Positions 13,073 to 48,925 of a DNA stretch of 64,000 bases are shown one piece after another (the stretch's first letter is position 1; every line of letters begins with the position of its first letter). Where the stretch lies: contig NC_042998.1 of the NCBI RefSeq assembly GCF_006345805.1, positions 87,606,001 to 87,670,000 of the forward strand, written 5' to 3'. Source of the stretch: Octopus sinensis (Eukaryota). The notes beneath the pieces are model-generated. The model made no database searches, was not told the origin of the DNA, and worked only from the letters and a program-made list of their open reading frames with translations. The translations under genes and the position numbers were made by a program.

Positions 13073-13114
13073 CATACATACATACATACATACATACACA
13101 CATACATACATATA

Positions 13115-16100
13115 TAGTTAAAATTTATAGAAAAACAAAAGATGAAGGCCGGTGTATGAACAAGCAGGTGTATTATTTTGACGCTCGGCGAAGTGAAAAA
13201 GTCTTTTACGTTACAGAAAGGAATAAGAGAAAATAAATAGAGAGAATAAAAAGATACCATATGGTATCAATGAAGAGAGAATGTTGGTAGGAGTGAAAAG
13301 CGGAAGTAAGTGTCACAGCACGAGAGGAGAGGCGTGGAGTCCGATAAAGGGAGGAGGGGAGTTGAGCCCATGTGACGCAAAAAAGCGAAGAGGGGAGGTG
13401 AGCCCATGTGACGCAAAAAATCGAAGAGGGAAGATTAATTTCAGTTCATGGCAAAGGTGGGAGTCCGGATGACCCCTGTGCAAAAACAGTCCGAACACAG
13501 AGACCGGTGTGTCATTGCCGAGTCTGATGTCTCGGAGGTGCTCTGCGAACCGGTTAGCCAAGCGACGTCCCGTTTGACCGATGTATAGAGAAGGGCAGAA
13601 AGAGCAGGAGATGCAATAAATGACGCTGCTAGAAGTGCAGGTAAAGGAGTCGGTGATATGATAGTGACGATGATGTGTGCCAGTGAGGATGGTGGCGATG
13701 GAGGGTCGGGGCAAGTACAACAGCATGGGTGGGAGCAGGGAAACGAGCCAGGCTGGGAGGTGGGGTTAGATAAGAAACTGTGACCAGGAGGTCACGCAGG
13801 TTGTGGGGTCATTTGAAGGAGGGAAGGGTAGGTTGGGGAAGATATGCGAGGTGGAGAGGTCGGACTGGAGTCGCTGGAAGTGCGTTTTGGAAGGGCAGGG
13901 TGGAGGGGTGGTAGGTCGGGGAAAATGAGAGACGGGCAATGGCGGGCGGATGCGGGAAGAGAGAGCAGCGGCACGGTCCACTGAAGTATTCTGGGAAGGG
14001 CCGTGTGGATAGTGGGGAGGGTACATCCACAAAGGATGAAGTGGCGAGCTATTAGTTGAAACTGTGTCTCAAAGTCTTGGTTGTCACTACAGAGCTTGCG
14101 CAGACGGGGGATTTGGGAGTAGGGAATAGAGAGCTTGGTGTAGGCAGTGTAGGAGGAGAAGTTAATGTAGGAGTATGAGTCGGTGTGTTTGTAGTAGATG
14201 GAGGTAGTGAGAGCGGAGTGGTGTATGCTGACAGAAATGTTGAAAAATGCGAGGGAAGTGTAGGAAATAGTCAAGAGAATTCGATGCCAGGATGGAAGGA
14301 TTGGACAAAAGGAAGGAAGGAGTCTAGCTGTTCGCGGGAGAGTGAGGTCGCATCAATACAGTCGACAATATAACGACTGTATAGTTCGGGAGTGGAACCA
14401 GTGAATCGTGAGAAAATTTGGGCTTCAACGTAGCCAACGAACAGGTTCACATAGTTGAGGCCCATTCTCGTTCCTATGACCACGCCTAAGTACTGTTGGT
14501 AAAAATCACTCGCGAACGAGAAGCAGTTGAAGGAGAGAACAAGTTCGGCCAGACGAATAAGTGTGGAGATTGGGAGTTGGACCGAAGGTCCAGAAAGTAC
14601 TTAAGTGCAAGAAGTCCTTCGTTGTGTGCGATCACCGTATATAAACTCTTGATATCTGGAGTGAAGAGAAGTTTAGAGAAGCCAGAAGGGAAGTAGAAAG
14701 AGCTAAAGTGACAGAGCGCATGGTTAGTGTCGTGGATGTGGAAGGGGGAAGCCACTAGTGGGGCAAAGATACGGTTGAGGTATTTAGAGATCAATTCCGT
14801 GGGGTAGTTACAGGAGGAGACGATGGGGCGGCCAGAGTTGTTGCGCTTGCGGATTTTGGGAAGGGAGTAAATGGTTGGGGTGCGTTGAGTGCGGACAATG
14901 AGATTTAGAGACGGGAGGAGGAGACGGAAGGATGAGATGAGGTCATGGATCGTGGAGAACACAGTCTGTTAGTAGTTAGACGTGGGGTTGGAAGGCAGAG
15001 GGCAATAGAAAGAGGTGTCTTGAAGTTGGCGGAGAGCTTCAGCCTTGTTGAGTTCTATGCGCCAAACCACCACGGCTCCACCTTTGTCGACCGGTTTTAT
15101 GATGATGTCTTTGCAGCGTCGGAGACATCGAAGGGCCGAGAGTTCGGCCGGGGAGATGTTAAAATGTCGGAGACGCATGCGAAATTTGAACCGGTCCACA
15201 ACACGTTGGCAGATGATTGCAAAATGATCAACTGCTAGGGACTGGCCAGGAGCTGGCGTCCAGTGAGATGGTCGGCAGCCCAGGTCAGTGAAGCAGTCCT
15301 CTTCATTTGATGCAGGTGGAGAGTTGTGGAATACTGCATATAGTCTGACGTGGCGCACAAAGCTATGAATATCAGCGCGGGTCTGAAATTCGTTACTGGA
15401 TAGAGTGAGGGGGGTGAAGCGCAGACACTTACCGAGAAGAGAGCGTTCTACCTCAGAGAAGGAGAGATCATAGGAAATGGTGACAACAGACTGAAGTGGA
15501 GAGGGGTGGTGGGGCAGTGGAAGGCTGGGAAGAGACAGAGGAGGAGTAATGGAAGGATGGGGTGAGGATGAGGGGAGTTGATCGGAGACGGAGAAGTATG
15601 GGGGAAGGGTGGATGTAGTGGCATCGGGTTTGACAAAATGAAGGAATGAGTGGAGTTTATGTTGTTTAGTGCGAGCGAGGAACTGGTGGAAACTATGATT
15701 TAAATGGATTATGAAGCGTAGAATGGAATGTGCTACGGATGGTGAAAGACAGGATAAAAAGGTGGAATAAGCGAGAGTGAGAAGGTGAACGATGGTGTGT
15801 ATTTTGGAGAGATTAGAACGAATGGTGGAACGCCTAAGGCGGTAGAAGTTGTACGGAGTATAGGTAGGATGGCAAAAGCAGAGTGGAAAGTGGGGTAGAA
15901 ATAGAGGTGGAAACATTTGAAGATGAGGTGGTGGTGAAGCAGCGACTGAGAAAGAAAACATGACTACAGAAGCGTGTCTTTTTGAAATCAGTTGGGAAAG
16001 ATTAATAGAAGGTTGAAAGCAACGGAAAGGAAGCGTGGAAAGGTGTGTCTTTAGGCGGTGGTGAAGGTGGAGTAGGAAGGATTTATAATCGGGCATGCTG

Positions 16101-16200
16101 GAAAAAGAATAAAAAAGAAAAAAAAGAAAAAAGAAAAAGAGAGAGAAAGGCAAAGCATGAAAAATCAGAAAGTTCAAGAAGTTCATATATATATATTGAG
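13115..16200 (-). mobile_element. Penelope-like retroelement (RT plus GIY-YIG endonuclease), pseudogenised
   Basis: RT motifs IYSLPKIRK..GRPIVSSC, DIKSLYTVI, GTRMGLNYVNLFVG and YIVD (catalytic YIDD mutated). GIY-YIG motif SVIYCISCSFCPSLYIGQTGRRLANRFAEH. Multiple frameshifts. Confidence 0.92.
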
Positions 16201-26272: not shown

Positions 26273-27250
26273 GAAGGAGAGTCAAAAATTATACGCATTC
26301 TTGCTTTTTCAATGCATTTACACAAAAACAGGGGATAAACAAATACGTCATTATATAGTATATATATCTCCTATAGTGTATATATCTCCTTCCTTTTCGA
26401 TGCACTTGGTCCAGCGATCTTCAAGCTTGCGTATTCCCTCCAAGAAAAAGGTTTTCGGTTGGTCGTGCAACCATTTATAGACCCCTTCCTTCACATCTTC
26501 ATCCGCAGGAAATCGACGACCTCGTAAACCATGTTTGAGCGGTTCAAAGATATGATATTCGGAAGGGGAAAGATCTGGGTTGTAAGCAAGGTGTTCCAGA
26601 ACCTCAAAACCCAATTGGTGAATGGTTTCAACGGACTGGGTGGCCGTATGTTGGCCTGCATTGTCATGCAATAGCAAAACTTTCTTCGACAATAGGTGCA
26701 GGAATGACTGTGTGGTAAGAACTAGCTTATCAGTCACATCGTTCCGGGCCCAGTCCCACTGCGTGGAACCTTGGGCAAGTGTCTTCTACTATAGCCTCGG
26801 GACGACCAAAGCCTTGTGAGTGGATTTGGTAGGCAGAAACTGAAAAGAAGCCCGTCGTATATATATATATATTATATATATATAATATATATATATATAT
26901 ATAGTTCGGTATTCATTCATTTACTGCTGATTGAAACTGCGATTGCGCGTTGAATTTGAAAAATTATAATGTATAACGATGAGACACGTGTAATTTGTCT
27001 CTTAATTATATGTTAGTGTTATGGCGTGATCACTGAGGAGAATTTCGCCTAGCAAATTACTTTATTTGCTAAAAAAATTTGGAATCTAGGTATGACCATA
27101 ACAAAAATAACAAGGTAAAAGTTTATATTTTTAATTCCTTTCAAAACTGCTCTTAAATGTGGTTTTGGTCGTTTTGACTACTTCTTCTAGCGTGTAAAGC
27201 TGCCTCTTGAAGACAGTTTCCCTTGTGTTTAAATGCACCACTATTTTATA

Positions 27251-27324
<74 letters not shown>

Positions 27325-27325
27325 G

Positions 27326-27366
<41 letters not shown>

Positions 27367-28075
27367 CAGTGTTTGTACACCACCATCGTTTGACGACGAT
27401 GTCGGTGTGTTTACGTCCCCGTAAATAAGCGGTTCAGCAAAAGAGACCGATAGTATAAGTACTAGGCTTACTAAGAATTACATTGACTGACCTCATGACA
27501 TTTGCGTTTGCGCTCTGCGGTAAGCACTCTTAGAACCCATCTTGCACAGACATTATGGAAGCCGAGCTTATCGTGGGTAATTTGATTGGCAGAACCATGT
27601 CTAATCTGTAGAGAACGAGCTACCTCATCATGATAACTCGCCGTTTCACCATTACCATCTCTCGAGCTTGCTGAATCTTCTCACCAGTGGTGGAGGTTGA
27701 TGGACGTCCTGCTCCCTCTTAATGCGTGACGCATGTCCGGCCACTTTTAAACTTCTCGATCCTCTCATACACATTTCCATGCGATAGTGCACTCTCCCCG
27801 TATTGAGCTGAAGGTTTGAAATGAATTTCAGCACCTGACATCTTCCGACCAGAGATATCGGATCACTGCTCTTGTTCTTCTTTGGTGCACATTGCTAGTG
27901 GAGCGGCAATGCTTACGCTGTAGAGCTAGAAAGAAAAAAAATTGCGCGATCAGGATCAAACTTCGATCACGTGACCACAATAGTACCAACTATAAGTATG
28001 CATGCACAGGACGAAGTGTGACAACAATAAATATATTTTATGGCGAAAGTGCCGATGATTTTTGACTTCCTCTCG
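26272..28075 (-). mobile_element. mariner (DD34D) element, interrupted by SINE and microsatellite insertions, with the central part deleted
   Basis: N-terminus 27490-27920: AAPLAMCTKEEQRAVIRYLWSE..GRPSTSTT..VCARWV. C-terminus ORF 26351-26737: LLHDNA..YNPDLSPSEYHIF. TIRs cgagaggaagtcaaaaat at 28075 and cgaaggagagtcaaaaatt at 26272. Confidence 0.85.
26745..26858 (+). mobile_element. CORE-type SINE fragment nested in the mariner element
   Basis: ccttgggcaagtgtcttctactatagcctcggg...gaaagaagcccgtcg; further pieces at 26115-26222 and 27365-27478. Confidence 0.8.
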
Positions 28076-28164
28076 TATATAATTATATATATCCATGTAT
28101 ATATTATATATAATATATATATAATATATATATATATAGTATATATATATATATATATATATAT

Positions 28165-28206
<42 letters not shown>

Positions 28207-28302
28207 CATATATATTAATATTATATATAGATTAATATATATATATATAATATATATATATATATATCTAAGGTATATATATACATATATATATAATATA
28301 TA

Positions 28303-28415
<113 letters not shown>

Positions 28416-28433
28416 GGATATATATATTATATA

Positions 28434-28488
28434 CGAGAGGAAGTCAAAAATCATCGGCACTTTCGCCATAAAATATATTTATTGTTGT

Positions 28489-28547
<59 letters not shown>

Positions 28548-28612
28548 ATATATATATCCATTTATCCATATATATTATGGTGAAAGTGTAGATAATTTTT
28601 GACTTCCTCTCG
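28434..28612. mobile_element. mariner-derived MITE-like unit (TIR, microsatellite, TIR) with TA flanks
   Basis: ta|cgagaggaagtcaaaaat ... atttttgacttcctctcg|ta. Confidence 0.6.
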
Positions 28613-28768
28613 TATATGATATCATTCGGCACTCTACTCTTGAAGTGGTTGGGGTATTGTAGAACACGGTCGAATAACTCCAGAGAGTAACAGAAAAGGT
28701 CGAGCACTTTATTTATCAAATATGTATACATATCTCTCTGTTTGTCTGTTTGTCTCTCTCTCTTTCTC

Positions 28769-28814
<46 letters not shown>

Positions 28815-29125
28815 CAGAAAGAAAGAATATGTATGCACATCTCACTGTTTGCTTGGCCTTTTCTGTTACCCTCTGGAGTTATTCAACCGTGTTCTACAAT
28901 ACTCCAACCACTTCAAGAGCAGAGTGCCGAATGATATCATATACGAGAGGAAGTCAAAAATTATCCGCACTTTCGCCATAATATGCACACATACGCATAA
29001 AACACACACATATATATACATCTACATATATGTATATAAACGTAAATACATATAAAATAAGTATATATCTATAAATATACGTATGAATATACATATATAT
29101 ATATAAATATACGTATGAATATATA

Positions 29126-29167
<42 letters not shown>

Positions 29168-29198
29168 GTATATGTATATGTATATATATATATATATA

Positions 29199-29244
<46 letters not shown>

Positions 29245-29269
29245 TATATATATATATATATGTATATGC

Positions 29270-32200
29270 GAAACAATTAGAACATTTTTCTCTAACAACG
29301 CTAACCAAGGACCTCCAAACGCGTCATTATATGGGATCAATACTCTAACAACATACCAAATGAAACAACACATAATCCCACAATGGAACAAATCACTCAG
29401 AGATAGAAAGTTCGCCTTTTAGAAGATGATCCAAAACAACAACAAAGCGGATATATACGAAAAATGTCTCAACCGGACCCCGTTAATCCTCCCACGTAAA
29501 TTCCAGTTCAAAGCTATTACAGAGGAACCTGAAACACAAAGACACCTCAGGGAGAGAATGGCACTGGAAAAAATGAAAATGGAAATAGAACTTCTGAAAT
29601 TGAGGGCCCAAACGAATGAGGATAAAATAAAATCCACCGATGAAGATATCAACGAAGAAATTCGCAAAATTGCCCAAGGCCCAGATCAAGAGAAGGTCTC
29701 CAAACTATGGAAAGAGGACTGTGAAAAAGAAGAACTAAAATCTCTCCAACGCTGGGAGAAAAACGCCATTTGGTTCTCAGACTATGAAGCCGTCTTTCAA
29801 ACAGAGCACGCCTCCAACAACTCTTTCCAGAAAATAAGAAAACCAAAACAACACCCAAACACCGATACACACCTGTCTAAAAATCGGAACCTTCACTACT
29901 TTCAAAAAAAGAATACAGGACCTAACCCTAACTCTGTAAGTAGCCAGCGTTACAATATCAGGAATACCCCCACTTCAAGCAGAGAAAGGATAAATCAAAC
30001 ACCCCAGCATAGACACTGCAACCTTATCCCCACCCAAAAGAGTTACCAACGAAATCTCCGCCCCATAAACCGTTAAACAACCATGCACAACAAACCCACT
30101 CCACTTACAATGATTACCAACGAAGGCCTCCTAGAACACCACACCCGAATATGGGATATCGGGATGCTCTCCTCAATACTGCTCCAAGAACACACACCAT
30201 AAATCACAACAGGAGACCCCACATCAACAAAGAACAACTATATAATAGCTACCGTCCCAACCACCGCATTCATTTTTTAGACCCAATACGCAAACACAGA
30301 GGCACAAGATAGCACCAAACAAGCAGGAGGAACCAAAAGTAATAAAAAATCAATCTAACTCACAAGGAACTAACATCAAACCAAATTAACATACTTTCCA
30401 AAGGACTCAAGTTTACACCCACCCCACAACACCCCAACTACAACGAAATGAAAGAAGACATCGCAGAATTCTGCAGAAAATAAGACTTACTGAGGAGCTA
30501 TACGATAAATACAACGAGGACGAATCGTTAGCCAGAAATAGGAGTAACTACACCCCCTCGAAAGGTAAGAACAAAACACTTGATGATTTCTGTGACCACA
30601 TATCTAATTACCCATATCAACATATGCACAAACAAAAAACACAAACCAAACTTCAGCAAAAAAGAATGGGCTGAGTTGAACAAATTAACACGATAAAACA
30701 ATAACAATCAAAGAGGCCGATAAAGGGAGTGCTGTTGTCTTAATGGATACGACATTTTACATAACTTTGGTACTTTCTATGCTGGAAGACACAACATACT
30801 ATGAAAAGGCAAAAACTACAGTCAACAAAAAATAATGAGGGAACTAAAATCCATATTAAACCCATACAAAGCAGGGCTCACCGACAAGAATATGATTATA
30901 TGACCAATTTCACAAGTAAAACTAGCCAATTCTACGGTATACCTAAGATCCACAAAAGTGAAAAAATAAGCAACGCATGCAAGATAGCTACAGACAAAAT
31001 AATTAAAGTCCCTAATCCTAATGACCTCAAATTGAGACCCATAATAGCAGGTCCCGCATGCGAAACCCACCGCCTCAGTAACTTTTTAGACACCCTGTTA
31101 AAACCACTCCTCAAACATGTCAAAAGCTATATAAGGGACGACTTAGATATGCTCAATCACCTACCGAATACTATAAACAAAAACACCATACTGGTATCCT
31201 TCGATGTAGTCAACATCTACTCCAATATCCCCCACAACCTAGGACTAGAGGCAATCCAATTCTGGCTAGAGAATCACGCCAACGAACTACCACACCGCAT
31301 CAAAAAAGAATTTGTGATAGAAGGGGTAAATTCATCCTGGAAAATAACTTCTTCGCCTTCAATGACAACTTCTACCGACAAAAATCGGGGACTGCGATGG
31401 GTACACGAATGGCCCCCTCCTTTGCCAACCTAGTCATAGGATACCTAGAGATCAGTCTGTATCGTAAGGTTCTAGAAAGATATGGCAGCCCTTTCTCCAT
31501 CTACATAGAAAACAACTGGAAGAGATATCTAGATGACTGTTTCATCCTTTGGCATAAAAATATAGAAAAACTCATAGAATTCCAGAAAATTTTAAACGGA
31601 CTGGACGTAAACATCCAATTCACGATGGAATATAGCCAACAACAACTCCCCTTCCTCGATATCCTCATTAAGAAAGCTAATAATATAATAGAAACAGACA
31701 TATACTATAAGCCTACAGACTCTAAGCAATATCTTCCATTCAATTCATGCCACCCCAGACACACCAGGATGAATATCCCCTTCAATCTAGCAAAAAGGAT
31801 ATGCACTATAGTCTCTAACGCAAACACCAGAGACACACGACTACAAGAACTAAAAGATACCCTTATCACCAGGAACTATCCACCTTCACTTATTGACAAG
31901 TGCATTCAACGTGCCCTTCAACTTAACATCAAGGAACTGAGACATCCCAAATCAAAGAAAAACTTACAACCAAAAGCCTTACCATACATCTCCACACACA
32001 ACCTCTCAATAACGAAGCCTTCGACACCATCCTCCACAACATACCCCTCCTAAAAAAGACCACAGAATGAACACAATCCTCCAAACACACACGATCATAA
32101 AAGCAAAAGACAGCCTAGATCCATGAAAGTCTCCTTACACAAGCCCGAATTCACTCTTCAACACAGAAGCCGACAGTAAAAAAATGTGGAAGACCCAATT

Positions 32201-32313
32201 GCGGGATATGCGACTATCTAATTGAGGGATCAGAGTTCTCCTTCAAACAGGGACAACGGTTTACAGTGAAAAGCAACTTCACATGTGCTTCGGAGAACCT
32301 AATATACTCACTA
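29270..32313 (+). mobile_element. Penelope-like element (Neptune-like, Cys-rich linker before GIY-YIG), 3'-truncated and frameshifted
   Basis: RT motifs FYGIPKIHK, LRPIIAGP, SFDVVNIYSNIPH, GTRMAPSFANL, YLDD, LPFLDI and YYKPTDS. Linker KCGRPNCGICDYL, then FTCASENLIY, which ends abruptly at ~32313. Confidence 0.92.
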
Positions 32314-32386
32314 TGTGACAATCATAGTTGTCGCCGAGAATTAGATTTCCTTCACAAATACTTATACTTTTTCCAACTATGATTGT

Positions 32387-32431
32387 CACACGCTGACGAG
32401 AGGTCAATACCTCGAAACTCGAGTCCGTGTG
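32387..32431 (+). ncRNA. Type I hammerhead ribozyme, copy 1 (predicted cleavage GUC^ after 32425)
   Basis: CACACG-CTGACGA-GAGG-tcaata-CCTC-GAAA-C-tcga-GTC^-CGTGTG. Complete canonical core, 6-bp stem I, 4-bp stem II, palindromic short stem III. Confidence 0.92.
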
Positions 32432-32730
32432 TATCATAAGTTGAAGACGGGAAGGATGACTTCCCTTTGCAAATACTGACAGGACACAGATAGTGTGTCT
32501 ATGGCCAGCTGGAGGAGTGTGTCCTCCTGGGGCTAAAAACTACGTAGCATCCACCCTTAGGGGTTAGCCAATTGAAATGCAAAAATACGTCACGATGTGT
32601 TACCGCTACAGTATAAACTACTTTGATTTTATCATTGTTTGATTCACTTTTTCAATATCAGCGACAGGGCGCTGGAAAAAGTATAAGTATTTGTGAAGGA
32701 AATCTAATTCTCGGCGACAACTATGATTGT

Positions 32731-32775
32731 CACACGCTGACGAGAGGTCAATACCTCGAAACTCGAGTCCGTGTG
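32731..32775 (+). ncRNA. Type I hammerhead ribozyme, copy 2 (cleavage after 32769)
   Basis: Identical to copy 1. Confidence 0.92.
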
Positions 32776-33079
32776 TATCATAAGTTGAAGACGGGAAGGA
32801 TGACTTCCCTTTGCAAATACTGACAGGACACAGATAGTGTGTCTATGGCCAGCTGGAGGAGTGTTCCTCCTGGAGCTAAAAACTACAGTAGCATTCACCC
32901 TTAGGGGTTAGCCATATTGAAATGGAAAAATACGTCACGATGTGTTACCGCTACAGTATAAACTCACTTTGATATTTATCATTGTTTGATTTCACTTTTT
33001 CAATATCAGCGACAGTGGGCGCTGGAAAAAGTATAGTATTTGTGAAGGAAATCTAATTCTCGGCGACAACTATGGTTGT

Positions 33080-33124
33080 CACACGCTGACGAGAGGTCAA
33101 TACCTCGAAACTCGAGTCCGTGTG
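33080..33124 (+). ncRNA. Type I hammerhead ribozyme, copy 3 (cleavage after 33118)
   Basis: Identical to copy 1. Confidence 0.92.
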
Positions 33125-33431
33125 TATCATAAGTTGAAGACGGGAAGGATGACTTCCCTTTGCAAATACTGACAGGACACAGATAGTGTGTCTATGGCCA
33201 GCTGGAGGAGTGTGTCCTCCTGGGGCTAAAAACTACAGTAGCATCCACCCTTAGGGGTTAGCCATATTGAAATGGCAAAAATACGTCACGATGTGTTACC
33301 GCTACAGTATATAACTCACTTTGATATTTATCATTGTTGATTTCACTTTTTCAATATCAGCGACAGTGGGCGCTGGTAAAAGTATAAGTATTTGTGAAGG
33401 AAATCTAATTCTCGGCGACAACTATGATTGT

Positions 33432-33475
33432 CACACGCTGACGAGAGGTCATACCTCGAAACTCGAGTCCGTGTG
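33432..33475 (+). ncRNA. Type I hammerhead ribozyme, copy 4 (cleavage after 33469)
   Basis: Same as copy 1 except loop II is 1 nt shorter (tcata). Confidence 0.9.
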
Positions 33476-33684
33476 TATCATAAGTTGAAGACGGAAGGAT
33501 GACTTCCCTTTGCAAATACTGACAGGACACAGATAGTGGTCTATGGCCAGCTGGAGGAGTGTGTCCTCCTGGAGCTAAAAACTACAGTAGCATTCACCCT
33601 TAGGGTTAGCCATATTGAAATGGCAAAAATACGTCACGATGTGTTACCGCTACAGTATATAACTCACTTTGATATTTATCATTG

Positions 33685-33722
<38 letters not shown>

Positions 33723-33726
33723 GTAT

Positions 33727-34030
33727 GTATTATGTGTTATCCTGCACTGCCAGTATAGTGCTTCTGGTCTCTTTTCTTTTGGGTTCCTTTCGTCAGGCAT
33801 TCCCACCTGTTTCCTCCAGCAAATTCTGTTGTGGCTACAAGGAATTGATTATGTAATCCCTTGTTGCGTAATTCTTCTTCATGTCTTCTTTGTACTTCTA
33901 TCTTCGTTTTCCTTTTTTTCTCTGCTTTCAATACTCCTTCGTTTCTAACTATCACTAGCAAGGTTTCCTTACTTTGGGCTGTGTATCTCATTAAGCTCTC
34001 GTGTTCAGCACGCATGCAGTCTTCCACATG
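33727..34030 (-). mobile_element. R4/Dong-clade LINE fragment (same subfamily as 7500-8575 and 59410-60845)
   Basis: EDCMRAEHESLMRYTAQSKETLLVIVRNEG matches ORF 59979-60407. Confidence 0.75.
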
Positions 34031-34049
34031 GGCGTGATGGAAAGTGTCA

Positions 34050-34930
34050 TCTGTCCATAGCCAGCAGATTAAGGTGACGCTTGTTTACTGGTCACGTTTT
34101 AAGAACTCTACGAAGAATTCTTGCAGTTCCAAGAAATGCTGATTTTTTTAGGTGTTCTATTTTCACACTTGCACCAATCTTTTTCAGCCATGTTGGTAGT
34201 TGAGTGCTGATACTTCCAAGTGCACCAGTTACTATTGGTATCGCGTCCACTCTCTTCATTGACCACAACCTTCGTATTTCCCACTTCAAATCTTCATAGT
34301 TTTGTATTTTTCTTCTTCTTTCACATTGACCCTGTTGGCTCCAGGGCATGCTATGTCGATTATCATACATGTTCTTTCATTTTTATTCACCACAACAATG
34401 TCTGGTTTCTGATGTCTGGTCTGCTGATCGCATTGGATCATTGCATCCTACAGGATTTTACAATTCTCAGTTTGGTGACTCATTCTGGAGTTTTCTCATA
34501 CCACGTCTTTGCTCTTTGTAAGCCGTGATTTCTACAGAACTCCCAAGTGTTTTCTATATAATTGGTCCTTAACGCTTGTTCCTGAGCTGCCCATATGAGT
34601 GCCTTTGTCTCTCTCTTCAGGTCACTCCTTCTAACCCATAGCCACCAGTCCTCTGTATCTGTCTTGGTATTCACATCTCTTGCAAACTGACCGTACATTT
34701 TCTTTTCCTTGCTTTTTCTGTTTTTTTTTGTTCATTTCTTGTTTAAATTTTTCTCCACGACAGTTTTATATACCATTCTAGGCTGTTTTTCTCTGCTTCG
34801 ATATAGTCATGACAACTGATCGAACCTCTCCCACCCTTTCTTCTGGACAAGTACAGCCTATCAGTATCACTCATAGGGTGGGAAGCTCCGTGTACTGTCG
34901 ACATTTATCTGGTCTTGGTATCCATTTTCT
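34050..34930 (-). mobile_element. R4/Dong-clade LINE 3' fragment with REL domain
   Basis: SDLKRETKALIWAAQEQALRTNYI, KIQNYEDLKWEIRRLW, IPIVTGALG and LGTARILRRVL. Confidence 0.8.
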
Positions 34931-35374: not shown

Positions 35375-35450
<76 letters not shown>

Positions 35451-35790
35451 GCTACTACTACCACCAAATCAGGCCTTCTAGCTTCTGTTACTCTGTCAGT
35501 CTTACTTTCTAGTACTTCACAAGGTTCATAACATTTATCAGTATGTTCAAAGCCTAGCTTTCTACATAGTTCCTAGTGGATTACTCTCCCTAGATTGTCA
35601 TGTCTTTTCTTGTATTCTTTCTGTGCCAGTATGCTACATTCACTTACTAAAAGCTTTCCGCTTTTATTTTTCATAATATACATTGGGAGCCTACTTGGTT
35701 TTTGTGTATGTTGGCTTTTATTCAATTAGTCCTTAATTCTTGATCTTGTGCAGCTACTAACAAACTTTCTGTCTCCTTCTTTAGCTCTCC
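35140..35790 (-). mobile_element. Degenerate R4/Dong 3' fragments split by a (CTA)n tract
   Basis: GELKKETESLLVAAQDQELRTN and IPVVIGALGTI-like motifs. Confidence 0.55.
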
Positions 35791-35799
35791 TATACAAAA

Positions 35800-36287
35800 C
35801 TCAGTATACCCATCGTGACTACCCGTTTGATAAGGGTACACCAGATACATGCATCAGAGCCATATACGCACGATATAGTGATCTCATATCAAGATAAACA
35901 GCGCATTTCCTTGCTGGTGGGTCCCAGCTAGAATTTTCTTCGGGTTGAGTAGCCCATCCTGCTCAAAAGATCCCAGAATAAGGGTTGTTTAAGGATGTTG
36001 AACAAAGCACCCATGTTTCCAAAGGTGGATTATCCAAACAACAAAGAATCCCTCTCAACACATGGCTATGATGCTCCCCCTCTACTTCTGCTCGTGATCA
36101 GAGATGCATATATTGCCAGCCACTAAGGGACATGCTCAAATGGTTAAGTTTATGCAACTGACAAGCAAATCTGTGGTACTGAGCAGAATATTTGGTGTGG
36201 CCCATCATCTATACCAAGACAAAACTATGTACATGATAACACTTCCAATCAGTTAAGATCAGAAGCCATTAGAGCCACTGTCTGGTA
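35800..36287 (-). mobile_element. Diverged copy of the ~550-bp (TAA)n-associated element
   Basis: Colinear with 36435-36971. Confidence 0.85.
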
Positions 36288-36387
36288 ATTGCTATTATTA
36301 TTATTATTATAATTATTATTATTATTATTATTATCATCATCATCATCATTATCATCCACTTCCTCCTCCTCCTCCTCCTCATCATCA

Positions 36388-36434
<47 letters not shown>

Positions 36435-36971
36435 GAGTGAGAGAGCAGTTCATGCCATCAAAGTGACACTGGGGTAAAATATTCGAAGCCCAATATACCC
36501 ATCATGACTACCCGTCTGATAAGGGTACACCAGGCACATGCATCACAACCATATGTGCGCGACATGGTAATCTCATATCAAGATAAACAGCACATGACCT
36601 TGCAGGTGGGGCCCAGTTAGAAATTTCTTCAGGTTGAGTAGCCTATCCCACTCAAAAAGTCCCTGAATAAGGGTTGTTTAAGGATGTTGAAAGAACCACC
36701 CATGTTTCCAGAGGTGAATTATTCAAACTCCAAAGAATCCCTCTCAACACATGGCTATGATGCTCCCCCACTACTTCTGCTCGTGATCAGAGATGCACAT
36801 ATCGTCAGCCACTAAGGGACATGCTCAACTGGTTACGGTCAAACAACTGACAAGCAAATCTGTGGTATTGAGCAGAGTATTTGATGTAGCCCATCTTTTA
36901 TACCAAGACAAAACAATGTACATGATAACTCTTCCAATCAGTTAAGATCAGAAGCCATGAGAGCCACTGCC
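36435..36971 (-). mobile_element. ~550-bp (TAA)n-associated non-coding element, near full length
   Basis: Flanked on both sides by (TTA)n. Confidence 0.9.
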
Positions 36972-37097
<126 letters not shown>

Positions 37098-37873
37098 TGT
37101 TGTTGTTGTTGTTGTTGTTATTATTACCCCTTTTATCTCTCGACACCCTATTATCTCATTACTTTTACCATTTGCATATAGGACCCAGTAGTTTCAGAGT
37201 GAAAGTGAAATTGATTATTATACAGCATTGGTGATGTTTTTTTCCTAATTTTAATGTTTATAGCATTAGACAGATGATTTACTTGCATTTCTTGGATAGT
37301 GGCTGCTGTTCCTTATTGTTATTGCCGTTGTTGTTATTATTGCTATTGCTGCTGTTGCTGTTGTTGCTTTTATCTGTGTTTAATAGCTTTTAAATGCAAC
37401 AGCAATTTATAAAAGAGTTATATTCCTGCTGTCCTTGCTGTTTGTAATCATCGTCGTCATAGGCATCGTCGTTGTCACCGTGAACGCTGCTATTATTTGT
37501 ATTGTTATTTTATTGAGCTAGCTTTATTTACGATTGTATTTTTTAGAGTGAATATTGTTGTTGTGATGTCGCTGTTGTTGTTTAATGTTGATATGTTGTG
37601 ATGACACAGTTGCTGATATTTTAAAAGTTTGTTGATATTAAAATTATGATGTATATTATCAATTTTCTATCGCAGTCTCTCAGATAGATTTTTTACTTCT
37701 GTTACCGCTTCTAGTTTTTACTATCTGCTTAGATGTAAGGATTCATAGTAATCATCTCAGCAGGGATACTTTTAAATCGCTTGTCCTATATTAGCTATTC
37801 TCTGTTTGTTGTTGCTGTTATTCTTTGCGTTCAGTGTGTTTGTGTGTGTGTCATACATACATACATACATACA

Positions 37874-47766: not shown

Positions 47767-48925
47767 TTAAATTGTGGAAAACTTAAATGAAATTTTAAAA
47801 ATATTTCCGTAGTTTTTAAATACAAGGGACATTTTCCTTTTTTCTGTCTGTCTCTCTTTTTTTTACTCTTGTAAAGACTTGGTAGCAGGTAGTAGGTAGT
47901 AGCAGTCCTAAAGGAATATTTGATATGAGTTCTTGGTTTTGATTGTTTAAGCTGCAGTAGTAGCCGAGGAAGTTGTTGACAAAGAAAATGAAGAAGAAGA
48001 GGGAGTAAGAAAAGAAGAGAAAGAACTGTGGTATATGCATCAAACTAATCGAGGAATCGGAGTTCTCTTTCAAGTAGGGCCAACGTTTTACAGTGGAAAG
48101 CAACTTCACATGTACTTCGGAAAACCTAATATATGTATTAACTTGCTCAGTTAATACATATATGTCGAGAGCAATACAAAGGCCAAACCAAAAACAGTCT
48201 ACGTCAAAGAATGCCTCTACATAGATCCCAGATCAAAATTTGCGGATACAGAAAAATAGCATTCAGTGAACACATCGACATTTGGACCACTAACAAACAA
48301 CCCGGCTTCAAAATTTTTTCCCTCTATAAATTCAGGGACGATATAACCTATAATCAGTGCATTAGCAAAGAGTCATATTTTATCACAAAATATAAACCCC
48401 TTTTGAATGCATTCACCGCAAATGACACTACTACAAGGGCCTTAGAATAATACCCATGCAAGTATTTAAAACGATATATTCAGAACAGTCACTAGCCATG
48501 AATTTATTCAAAACAATTCTAATCACTACTATTACAAACACAAAAGGTCACTTTTAGATCACTTGACCATTTAAGAAGATTCCACCAACATCCTACTACT
48601 GCCATACCACTCCCGTATTTTTTTTCTTCTTCTTCTTCTTCTTCTTCTTCTTCTTCTTCTTCTTCTTCTTCTTCTTCTTCTTCTTCTTCTTCTTCTTCTT
48701 CTTCTTCTTCTTCTTCTTCTTCTTCTTCTTCTTCTTCTTCTTCTTCTTCTTCCACGACTACTACTGCTGCTTAAACATTTAAAACAAAGAACTCATATCA
48801 AATATTCTTTTAGGACTTGCTTTCTGAGTAAAAAAGAGAGACAGAAAAAAAGGAAAATGTCCCTTGCATTTGAAAACTATGGAAATATTTAAAAAAACAT
48901 TTCATTCAATTTTTCCACAATTTAA
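47767..48925 (+). mobile_element. 5'-truncated Neptune-like PLE fragment (GIY-YIG part) flanked by ~170-190-bp inverted repeats
   Basis: 48060-48135 is homologous to 32235-32310; KESYFITKYKPLLNA is a GIY-YIG C-terminus; 47767-47965 is approximately the reverse complement of 48755-48925. Confidence 0.75.

What the first reader, a model, noticed from the sequence alone, without database searches (positions are those of the whole stretch)
32376..33686. Tandem array of ~350-nt monomers, each with an intact hammerhead ribozyme: candidate octopus non-LTR retrozyme (circRNA-forming)
Seen: about 3.8 head-to-tail units, spaced 344, 349 and 351 bp between predicted cleavage sites. Each contains CACACG-CUGACGA-GAGG-ucaaua-CCUC-GAAA-C-ucga-GUC^CGUGUG. 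The core is invariant in all four copies, while the rest of the unit differs mostly by 1-nt indels. Stem I extends through an internal loop (caactatgat pairs with atcataagttg), as expected where loop II docks on stem I in natural hammerheads. Established: tandem 150-400-nt monomers with type I hammerheads and a short palindromic stem III define non-LTR retrozymes in other metazoans (corals, mussels, salamanders). Their multimeric transcripts self-cleave to monomers that circularise. Inference: this is an active or recent retrozyme family. I do not know of a description in cephalopods but could not search.
Basis: partly seen in the sequence, partly recalled or inferred. Interest (0 to 1): 0.93.

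Follow-up and report, generated by a model that had tools for sequence, protein, structure and literature searches.

The report
Octopus hammerhead-ribozyme retrozyme array fused to Penelope element
This is a real head-to-tail array of about 349-base repeats, each carrying an intact self-cutting hammerhead RNA motif, so it is a cephalopod example of the known animal "retrozyme" mobile elements, and it is joined directly to a broken Penelope-like retrotransposon, the kind of element suspected of copying retrozymes.

Summary
Positions 32374-33686 hold 3.8 tandem units of about 349 nt. They contain four in-phase type I hammerheads with complete cores, cutting after 32425, 32769, 33118 and 33469. 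Copy 4 lacks one base in loop II. Every retrozyme feature that sequence alone can test is met: monomer size, type I hammerhead per unit, 43% GC, no coding capacity and a self-paired monomer. A diverged relative in Octopus bimaculoides keeps all 12 hammerhead base pairs, five of them through compensatory double changes, so the ribozyme has been under selection.

- The array abuts a frameshifted Penelope-like element (about 29265-32313, + strand) that is cut off inside its GIY-YIG endonuclease.
- The two are joined through a 62-nt inverted piece of the unit (32314-32375).
- The array ends at a defined unit position against (TA)18. The O. bimaculoides relative ends at the same position against (TA)n.

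The unit is not this Penelope family's terminal region. A second copy of the family's 3' end (48024-48620) has no hammerhead and no similarity to the unit. Transcription, self-cleavage, circularisation and current activity could not be tested. Verdict: a new member of a known kind, of moderate interest.

The parts
32374..33686 (+). Tandem array of 3.76 units of about 349 nt (non-LTR retrozyme array). Units run 32374-32717, 32718-33066 and 33067-33418, and the last is a partial unit 33419-33686.
   Evidence: TRF period 349, 3.8 copies, 96% identity. Self-BLAST and cleavage-site spacing agree. Alignment A1. GC is 42.9%.
32387..32431 (+). Hammerhead 1, type I. The extended stem I spans 32374-32443. 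Predicted cleavage is after C32425.
   Evidence: RF00163 32.2 bits, E 1e-5. The structure was written out and its energy evaluated.
32731..32775 (+). Hammerhead 2. Predicted cleavage is after C32769.
   Evidence: RF00163 32.2 bits.
33080..33124 (+). Hammerhead 3. Predicted cleavage is after C33118.
   Evidence: RF00163 32.2 bits.
33432..33475 (+). Hammerhead 4. The core is intact and loop II is one base shorter (UCAUA). Predicted cleavage is after C33469.
   Evidence: RF00163 28.7 bits. Alignment column 33.
32314..32375 (-). A 62-nt inverted copy of the unit segment just upstream of and running into the hammerhead (unit positions 254-314, counted from the cleavage site). It forms the junction between the PLE and the array.
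   Evidence: BLAST gives 62/62 identity to the reverse complement of 32673-32734, and 97-98% to the other units.
29265..32313 (+). Penelope-like element copy containing an N-terminal region, the RT, a CX4CxxC linker and the start of GIY-YIG (..NLIYSL). It is frameshifted and lacks about the last 86 aa and its own 3' UTR. The 5' limit is approximate.
   Evidence: Three-frame translation. Weak Pfam RVT_1 hits. 679 PLE-type homologues, the best from O. bimaculoides. tblastn homology to intact PLE proteins stops at 32313, which is residue 471 of 557 in P0003.
33686..33721 (.). (TA)18 microsatellite directly abutting the defined 3' end of the array. It is the presumed insertion target.
   Evidence: TRF. 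The relative in O. bimaculoides L001 ends at the same unit position against (TA)n.
29100..29262 (.). The end of a large TA-rich microsatellite tract that flanks the PLE-plus-array block on the left.
   Evidence: Sequence read. Repeat families.

Best explanation
The array is a non-LTR retrozyme, a short non-coding retroelement whose every unit encodes a type I hammerhead ribozyme.

Proposed life cycle, inferred from the family rather than shown here:
- The array is transcribed as a multimer.
- Each hammerhead cuts after GUC, either alone or as a double hammerhead formed through the palindrome ACUCGAGU in helix III.
- The monomers are strongly self-paired, and a host RNA ligase closes them into circles.
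- The RNA is then copied into tandem DNA by the reverse transcriptase and GIY-YIG endonuclease of a Penelope-like element (PLE), by target-primed reverse transcription at a microsatellite.

Shown here: the array, the four intact ribozymes, selection on the ribozyme fold across two octopus lineages, a defined 3' end abutting (TA)n at two independent loci, and a direct junction with a 3'-truncated PLE through a short inverted segment.

I read the block of PLE, inverted piece and array, flanked on both sides by (TA)n, as a complex PLE-style insertion. It may be a single event with template switching from retrozyme RNA to PLE mRNA.
For: - **Array and ribozymes:**
- **Defining features from Cervera & de la Pena 2020 (PMC7229834):** monomer of 150-450 bp (349 nt); a type I hammerhead in each unit; GC below 50% (42.9%); no LTRs and no coding capacity. 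The longest stop-free stretch is 74 aa, a six-frame composite query found no protein in 5.8 billion, and there is no tRNA-like part.
- **Self-paired monomer:** -108.5 kcal/mol, z -3.6.
- **Selection on the ribozyme:** the relative at O. bimaculoides L001 14137-14425(-) is 75-81% identical. It keeps 12 of 12 hammerhead pairs, 5 of them by changes on both sides. Slid controls give 14-53% paired and no compensatory pairs. The internal-loop bases UGU/U are also kept.
- **PLE-type insertion signature:**
  - The array's 3' end (..ATCATTGTT|(TA)18) and the L001 relative's 3' end (..ACATTGCTT|(TA)n) fall at the same unit position.
  - The two other PLE 3' ends in the window also abut microsatellites: (TTC)n at 48621 and (TATG)n near 13090.
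  - Craig et al. 2021 (PMC8557442) describe microsatellite bias, partial tandems, inverted 5'-truncated copies and 30-40-bp tails as typical of PLE insertions.
- **Physical link:** PLE homology stops at 32313 and the inverted unit piece starts at 32314, with no filler. The whole block is flanked by (TA)n on both sides.
- **Dimer pattern:** units 1 and 3 differ from units 2 and 4 at two sites in an alternating pattern, and units 2 and 4 differ by no substitution. This fits a dimeric template or duplication of a dimer.
Against: - No transcript, cleavage or circle data could be obtained.
- Only one array lies in the 64 kb, and only one diverged relative was found in about 97 kb of O. bimaculoides DNA. 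Copy number and mobility are therefore unproven.
- The Rfam score is just under the gathering threshold.
- Helix III has only 2 bp. A nearest-neighbour model prefers an inactive alternative fold of the 70-nt extended motif by 6.8 kcal/mol (-23.1 against -16.3), so efficient cleavage as a single motif is uncertain.
- The unit resembles no PLE end available here, so the mobilising PLE family is not identified.
- PLE fragments are dense in this window (three in 64 kb), so the adjacency could be a nested insertion plus deletion rather than one event.
- A defined 3' end 217 nt past the cleavage site is not what a randomly primed circle predicts.
- The excess of 1-nt indels suggests consensus errors in a long-read assembly. 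Fine details such as the copy 4 loop, the PLE frameshifts and perhaps the inverted junction may therefore not be real.
Confidence: 0.72

Rival explanations
1. The unit is simply the terminal repeat (pLTR or 3' UTR) of the coding Penelope-like element that lies upstream, present here in several tandem copies, and not a separate non-autonomous element.
For: A PLE ORF lies directly upstream on the same strand. PLE pLTRs typically carry hammerheads and PLEs form partial tandems (PMC8557442). Retrozymes in Xenopus are homologous to PLE pLTRs (bioRxiv 10.64898/2026.07.22.740005).
Against: - The PLE ORF is cut inside GIY-YIG, with about 86 aa and the whole 3' UTR missing. It is joined to the array through an inverted piece, not through its own 3' end.
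- A second copy of the same family's 3' end (48024-48620, 83.6% identical over the shared 110 nt) has a complete GIY-YIG C-terminus and a 3' UTR of about 170 nt ending in (TTC)n. It has no hammerhead core and no similarity to the unit above shuffled controls.
- No unit copy lies upstream of the PLE.
- The O. bimaculoides PLE copy of this family in L001 is not followed by the unit.
Confidence: 0.08
2. This is a dead relic: a hammerhead-bearing repeat that was once mobile and now persists as a local minisatellite, amplified by unequal crossing-over. It makes no RNA circles and is not being retrotransposed.
For: There is only one array in 64 kb. The alternating variant pattern of units 1/3 against 2/4 fits duplication of a dimer in place. 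The neighbouring PLE is frameshifted. The O. bimaculoides relative has an inactivating U4-to-C change in the core. Li et al. 2026 propose local amplification of retrozymes after birth from PLEs.
Against: All four cores are intact, and substitutions between units are few (0-9 per roughly 340 nt). The structure is maintained by compensatory change across lineages. Retrozyme arrays in other animals are constitutively transcribed (PMC7229834).
Confidence: 0.15
3. The PLE-inverted piece-array junction, and many of the differences between units, are assembly or consensus artefacts of noisy long reads. The array is real, but its context is not.
For: The ratio of indels to substitutions between units is at least 1, and many indels fall in short runs. 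Short inverted joins are a known type of long-read artefact (my own knowledge). In the O. bimaculoides assembly the relative borders an N gap, which shows that such repeats are hard to assemble.
Against: The junction is clean to the base, and the inverted piece is only 62 nt and lies inside otherwise collinear sequence. Inverted truncated copies and short tails are described as genuine features of PLE insertions.
Confidence: 0.1
4. The hammerhead-like motif is a chance resemblance inside an ordinary tandem repeat.
For: The Rfam score is below the gathering threshold.
Against: The core and all three helices are complete, with E 4e-4 per copy in the whole window. Five compensatory pairs separate it from a relative that is 75-81% identical, and no pair is broken.
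Confidence: 0.01

Closest known systems
Metazoan non-LTR retrozymes (Cervera & de la Pena, NAR 2020, PMC7229834), for example those of Mytilus galloprovincialis, Acropora millepora and axolotl Rtz_353
   Same: Tandem monomers of about 350 nt. One type I hammerhead per unit. Low GC. No coding capacity or LTRs. A strongly self-paired monomer. [quoted passage not shown] Coexistence with PLEs.
   Different: The host is a cephalopod, for which I found no retrozyme description. The array here has a defined 3' end against (TA)n that recurs at a second locus, and it is physically fused to a truncated PLE through an inverted segment. Expression as circles is not shown here.
Newt and salamander satellite 2 hammerhead repeats (about 330 bp)
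   Same: Unit size, type I hammerhead, a short helix III with a palindromic loop that allows double-hammerhead formation, and multimeric arrays.
   Different: In amphibians helix III has a single base pair and cleavage depends on dimers (PMC7229834). Here there are two pairs, and dependence on dimers is unknown. There is no sequence similarity.
Penelope-like element pLTRs with minimal hammerheads (Cervera & de la Pena 2014; Craig et al. 2021, PMC8557442; Li et al. 2026 preprint)
   Same: Hammerhead near a 3' end, partial-tandem architecture, inverted truncated copies at the 5' side, and insertion into microsatellites. Li et al. derive retrozymes from pLTRs.
   Different: The unit shares no sequence with either end of the adjacent PLE family. 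The hammerhead is a canonical type I with an extended stem I and an internal loop, not the minimal PLE variant. No ORF lies between repeats.
Plant LTR retrozymes (Cervera et al. 2016, PMC4918200)
   Same: A non-autonomous retroelement that uses hammerheads to release RNA that is then circularised.
   Different: The plant elements carry type III hammerheads in LTRs, have a PBS and PPT, are about 600-1000 nt, have higher GC and are mobilised by Gypsy elements. None of this applies here.

Membership tests
Non-LTR retrozyme (metazoan) | Head-to-tail tandem repeats with a monomer of about 150-450 bp | tested here: met
   Period 349, 3.8 copies. Spacings of 344, 349 and 351 nt.
Non-LTR retrozyme (metazoan) | A type I hammerhead with a complete catalytic core in each monomer | tested here: met
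   Four in-phase RF00163 matches with all core bases present. Helices I, II and III are kept with 5 compensatory pairs against the O. bimaculoides relative.
Non-LTR retrozyme (metazoan) | Low GC content (below 50%) | tested here: met
   42.9%.
Non-LTR retrozyme (metazoan) | No LTRs and no coding capacity (non-autonomous) | tested here: met
   No terminal long repeats. The longest stop-free stretch is 74 aa. The composite six-frame query has no homologue. There is no tRNA-like part. PBS and PPT were not searched for formally.
Non-LTR retrozyme (metazoan) | Monomer RNA highly self-paired | tested here: met
   MFE -108.5 kcal/mol for 349 nt, z -3.6. Stem I closes a long branched rod.
Non-LTR retrozyme (metazoan) | Transcribed, self-cleaved, and present as linear and circular monomer RNA | not testable with these tools
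   No transcriptome could be searched by DNA. The protein-based route to assembled reads found nothing.
Non-LTR retrozyme (metazoan) | Dispersed at many genomic loci (evidence of mobility) | tested here: inconclusive
   One array in 64 kb. One diverged relative at an unrelated O. bimaculoides locus with the same 3' end. No octopus genome could be searched as a whole, and scans of the metagenome and viral collections found nothing.
Non-LTR retrozyme (metazoan) | Coexistence with autonomous PLEs in the genome | tested here: met
   Three PLE copies or fragments in the window and PLE proteins in O. bimaculoides. None of the window copies is intact.
Hammerhead ribozyme type I (Rfam RF00163) | Core C3-U4-G5-A6-N7-G8-A9, G12-A13-A14, A15.1-U16.1, H17; helix I open, helices II and III closed | tested here: met
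   Read from the cmscan alignment. The structure was written out and checked against the sequence.
Hammerhead ribozyme type I (Rfam RF00163) | Score at or above the curated gathering threshold (34 bits) | tested here: inconclusive
   32.2 bits for three copies and 28.7 bits for one, so all are below threshold. E is 4e-4 per copy in the whole window, and these are the only hammerhead hits. The shortfall comes from helix sequences that differ from the Schistosoma-like consensus.
PLE pseudo-LTR (terminal repeat of a coding Penelope-like element) | The repeat is the terminal part of the coding element, continuous with its ORF end and 3' UTR, and recurs at the element's other end | tested here: not met
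   The ORF is truncated at 32313 and joined through an inverted piece. The same-family 3' end at 48024-48620 has no similarity to the unit. No unit lies upstream of the ORF.
Penelope-like element, Neptune/Nematis-type (applies to the upstream ORF, not the array) | [quoted passage not shown] | tested here: inconclusive
   RT homology is strong (E 1e-132 to PLE-type proteins). The linker CGRPNCGIC is present. GIY-YIG is cut after the first motif in this copy, but it is complete and above the Pfam cut-off in the sister copy at 48 kb. Assignment to a clade rests on the linker alone (PMC8557442); no phylogeny was made.

The most novel reading that the evidence does not exclude
The block 29265-33686 is the footprint of a single retrotransposition event. 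In it, a Penelope-like reverse transcriptase primed at a (TA)n nick on retrozyme RNA at a specific internal 3' site, copied nearly four units, and then switched template, through a short inverted stretch, onto PLE mRNA. That would be direct physical evidence that PLEs mobilise animal retrozymes. It would also mean that retrozymes carry their own defined 3' recognition end, like miniature PLEs, and are not randomly primed circles.
Probability: 0.3. Interest if true: 0.7.

Novelty: new member of a known kind. Interest (0 to 1): 0.48.

Why it matters
Animal retrozymes are an abundant source of small circular RNAs. Which machinery copies them back into the genome is still only inferred, from co-occurrence with PLEs and from pLTR homology in frogs. 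This locus extends the class to cephalopods, whose genomes are rich in PLEs. It also offers three concrete handles on mobilisation that can be tested genome-wide in existing octopus assemblies and RNA-seq:
- a base-exact retrozyme-PLE junction;
- a recurrent defined 3' end;
- the same microsatellite targeting as the neighbouring PLEs.

The covariation between two octopus lineages also shows that the ribozyme fold, and not just the repeat, has been maintained.

Tried and rejected
- **Default Rfam scan of the window:** no hit, because the hammerheads score 1.8 bits or more under the gathering threshold. They were recovered with E-value thresholds.
- **Six-frame composite protein query of the unit:** intended to reach assembled reads or transcripts that carry it. 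486 candidates, none significant.
- **Exact-pattern scans:** two scans of metagenome contigs (hammerhead pattern and the conserved GGAGGA hairpin pattern) and one of viral contigs gave 0 matches. The bacterial and archaeal genome collection was not scanned because it is irrelevant here.
- **Further O. bimaculoides and marine contigs fetched through PLE proteins (L002-L007):** no further unit copies and no Rfam hits.
- **Search with this PLE family's endonuclease region:** only 8 hits at 54% identity or less, apart from a short 64% match, so no intact same-family copy was obtained to inspect its 3' UTR.
- **Similarity between the unit and the PLE family's 5' or 3' untranslated ends:** local alignment scores were no better than shuffles.
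- **Hammerhead cores in the 3' UTRs of the other two PLE copies in the window:** none.
- **tRNA-like or Pol III-type origin of the unit:** none found by ARAGORN.
- **Simple snap-back of the cDNA as the origin of the inverted 62-nt piece:** rejected on geometry. The inverted piece starts 44 nt away from the array's first base rather than at it, so a switch to another template is needed.
- **The downstream minus-strand LINE-like ORFs as the cause of array truncation:** rejected, because the O. bimaculoides relative ends at the same unit position against (TA)n with a different flank.
Full report
**1. What is in the sequence**

Tandem Repeats Finder reports one array at 32374-33686 with period 349, 3.8 copies, 96% matches and 2% indels. 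The string that ends in the predicted cleavage triplet recurs at 32425, 32769, 33118 and 33469, which gives units of 344, 349 and 351 nt.

Rfam's default scan of the window is empty. With E-value thresholds, four matches to RF00163 (type I hammerhead) appear on the + strand:
- 32387-32431, 32731-32775 and 33080-33124, at 32.2 bits each;
- 33432-33475, at 28.7 bits.

The gathering score is 34. E is 1e-5 in the local search and 4e-4 in the whole-window search. No other hammerhead hit exists in the 64 kb. Every other low-E hit is a microsatellite matching a miRNA model.

The motif reads CACACG-CUGACGA-GAGG-UCAAUA-CCUC-GAAA-C-UCGA-G-UC|CGUGUG.
- All core positions are present.
- Helix I has 6 bp, helix II has 4 bp, and helix III has 2 bp capped by UCGA.
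- ACUCGAGU is a perfect palindrome.
- Stem I continues past an internal loop (UGU/U) into CAACUAUGAU/AUCAUAAGUUG.
- Copy 4 has a one-base shorter loop II.

**2. Quality of the copies**

Pairwise, the units differ by 0-9 substitutions and 4-9 indel events. Such an excess of single-base indels, many of them in short runs, is unusual for natural decay. It suggests consensus errors in a long-read assembly. I therefore treat the copy 4 loop deletion and the exact number of frameshifts in the neighbouring ORF as provisional.

Two substitution sites alternate: units 1 and 3 differ from units 2 and 4. Units 2 and 4 differ by no substitution. This is a dimeric higher-order pattern.

**3. Properties of the unit**

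- GC is 42.9%.
- The longest stop-free stretch is 74 aa. A composite of the six-frame stretches finds no protein among 5.8 billion clusters.
- No tRNA-like part is present.
- The cleavage-to-cleavage monomer folds into a long branched rod closed by stem I, at -108.5 kcal/mol and z -3.6.
- The complementary strand folds equally well, but it has no ribozyme.
- A nearest-neighbour model puts the catalytic secondary structure of the 70-nt extended motif at -16.3 kcal/mol, against -23.1 for an alternative fold. Together with the 2-bp helix III, this leaves open whether the motif cuts efficiently alone or needs the palindrome-mediated double hammerhead.

**4.

*An upstream Penelope-like element (PLE).*
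- Immediately upstream, on the same strand, lies a PLE. It shows LSKGLKF and IKEADKGSAVV motifs, an RT with FYGIPKIHK and YLDD, a CGRPNCGIC linker and the first GIY-YIG motif NLIYSL, spread over three frames.
- A conceptual RT query finds 679 PLE-type proteins. The best named ones are from Octopus bimaculoides: 85% identity for P0099 and 58% for two others. This supports an octopod origin.
- tblastn with intact relatives shows that homology stops exactly at 32313, which is residue 471 of 557 in P0003. About 86 aa of the endonuclease and the whole 3' UTR are therefore missing.

*An inverted junction piece.*
- From 32314 to 32375 the sequence is the reverse complement of the unit segment that runs into the hammerhead. 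It is 62/62 identical to 32673-32734.
- The forward array then starts. The junction is clean, with no filler.

*Flanks.*
- The block from about 29265 to 33686 is flanked on the left by a large TA-rich microsatellite and on the right by (TA)18.

**5. Is the unit merely this PLE's terminal repeat?**

The window holds a second copy of the same PLE family's 3' part at 48024-48620. It is 83.6% identical over the shared 110 nt.
- It has a complete GIY-YIG C-terminus (Pfam PF01541, 24.5 bits, above the cut-off).
- It has a 3' UTR of about 170 nt that ends in (TTC)n.
- That UTR has no hammerhead.
- It shows no similarity to the unit beyond shuffled controls. The same is true of the PLE's 5' end.
- No unit copy precedes the ORF.

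**6. Relatives elsewhere**

The O. bimaculoides locus fetched through P0099 (L001, CM046604.1) contains a sequence at 14137-14425(-) that is 75-81% identical to the unit. It is bounded on its 5' side by an assembly gap.

Its hammerhead differs at many positions yet keeps all 12 base pairs. Five pairs are changed on both sides: two in helix I, two in helix II and one in helix III. Slid-partner controls give 14-53% pairing and no compensatory pair. The triplet becomes AUA, which is still allowed. The internal-loop bases are kept. The only core change is U4 to C, which should inactivate that particular copy. This is good evidence that the fold has been selected across diverged octopus families.

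The relative also ends at the same unit position as the window's array (..ACATTGCTT|(TA)n against ..ATCATTGTT|(TA)18), with a different flank beyond. The element therefore has a defined 3' terminus about 217 nt after the cleavage site, and it has inserted at (TA)n twice.

The other two PLE 3' ends in the window also abut microsatellites. Craig et al. 2021 list microsatellite bias, partial tandems, inverted 5'-truncated copies and 30-40-bp tails as hallmarks of PLE insertion.

**7. Interpretation**

By every criterion that sequence can test, this is a non-LTR retrozyme as defined by Cervera and de la Pena 2020. The life cycle is taken from that family and is not shown here: multimeric transcript, hammerhead cleavage, ligation to circles, then reverse transcription into tandem DNA.

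The insertion signature and the fusion point to a PLE as the copying machinery. This agrees with the 2020 proposal and with the 2026 preprint that derives retrozymes from PLE pLTRs.

Two readings of the fusion remain open:
- It may be one event with template switching. This would explain the (TA)n on both flanks and a PLE that lacks its 3' end, which target-primed insertion should otherwise preserve.
- It may be a nested insertion followed by deletion.

A simple snap-back does not reproduce the geometry of the inverted piece. An assembly artefact at the junction cannot be excluded without reads.

**8. Novelty**

In the held library, no paper links retrozymes to cephalopods. The giant squid genome paper lists 235 Rfam hammerhead_1 hits without analysing them. 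A detailed Octopus vulgaris repeat annotation mentions PLEs but neither ribozymes nor retrozymes.

This is a new member of a known kind. Its added value lies in the PLE junction, the recurrent 3' end and the covariation.

**9. Limits**

No octopus genome or transcriptome could be searched by DNA. Copy number, activity, expression and circularisation are untested. The source species is not identified beyond being an octopod close to O. bimaculoides.

Noticed in passing
window 48024-48753: The 3' part of a PLE of the same family as the one next to the array. It has a frameshifted GIY-YIG region and a 3' UTR of about 170 nt, and it ends in a long (TTC)n tract (48621-48753). The sequences flanking it (about 47900-47965 and 48757-48820) are inverted repeats of each other, so the fragment sits at the centre of a palindromic context.
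   Followed up: partly
window 13313-16186 (- strand): A second, clearly different PLE with long RT and GIY-YIG ORFs (405, 158, 160 and 137 aa). Its 3' UTR runs into a (TATG)n microsatellite near 13090, and no hammerhead core was found in it.
   Followed up: partly
window 33737-34698 (- strand): ORF fragments that resemble the C-terminal end of a LINE-type retrotransposon protein (..IPIVTGALGSISTQLPTWLKKIG..). They point towards the (TA)18 that bounds the array. There is no Pfam hit.
   Followed up: partly
window 27200-29262: About 2 kb of TA-rich microsatellite. It contains a roughly 50-nt element (ATATCATATACGAGAGGAAGTCAAAAAT..CGCCATAA) repeated in direct and inverted orientation, including a 135-nt inverted repeat at 28572-28706 and 28850-28984.
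   Followed up: no
L001 14137-14425 (- strand), O. bimaculoides CM046604.1: A diverged relative of the unit that lies directly after an assembly gap (a run of N). A collapsed array may be hidden there. Its hammerhead has a single inactivating core change (U4 to C) but fully compensated helices.
   Followed up: yes
window 32374-33686: The excess of single-base indels over substitutions between near-identical units suggests that the assembly carries long-read consensus errors. Frameshifts in nearby ORFs should be read with that in mind.
   Followed up: partly
window 35375-35461 and 36260-37130: Long trinucleotide microsatellites, (TAC)29 and (TTA)n/(ATC)n tracts, lie downstream of the array. Together with a 300-nt direct repeat pair at 35791-36090 and 36480-36779 (87% identity), they show how repeat-dense this region is.
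   Followed up: no
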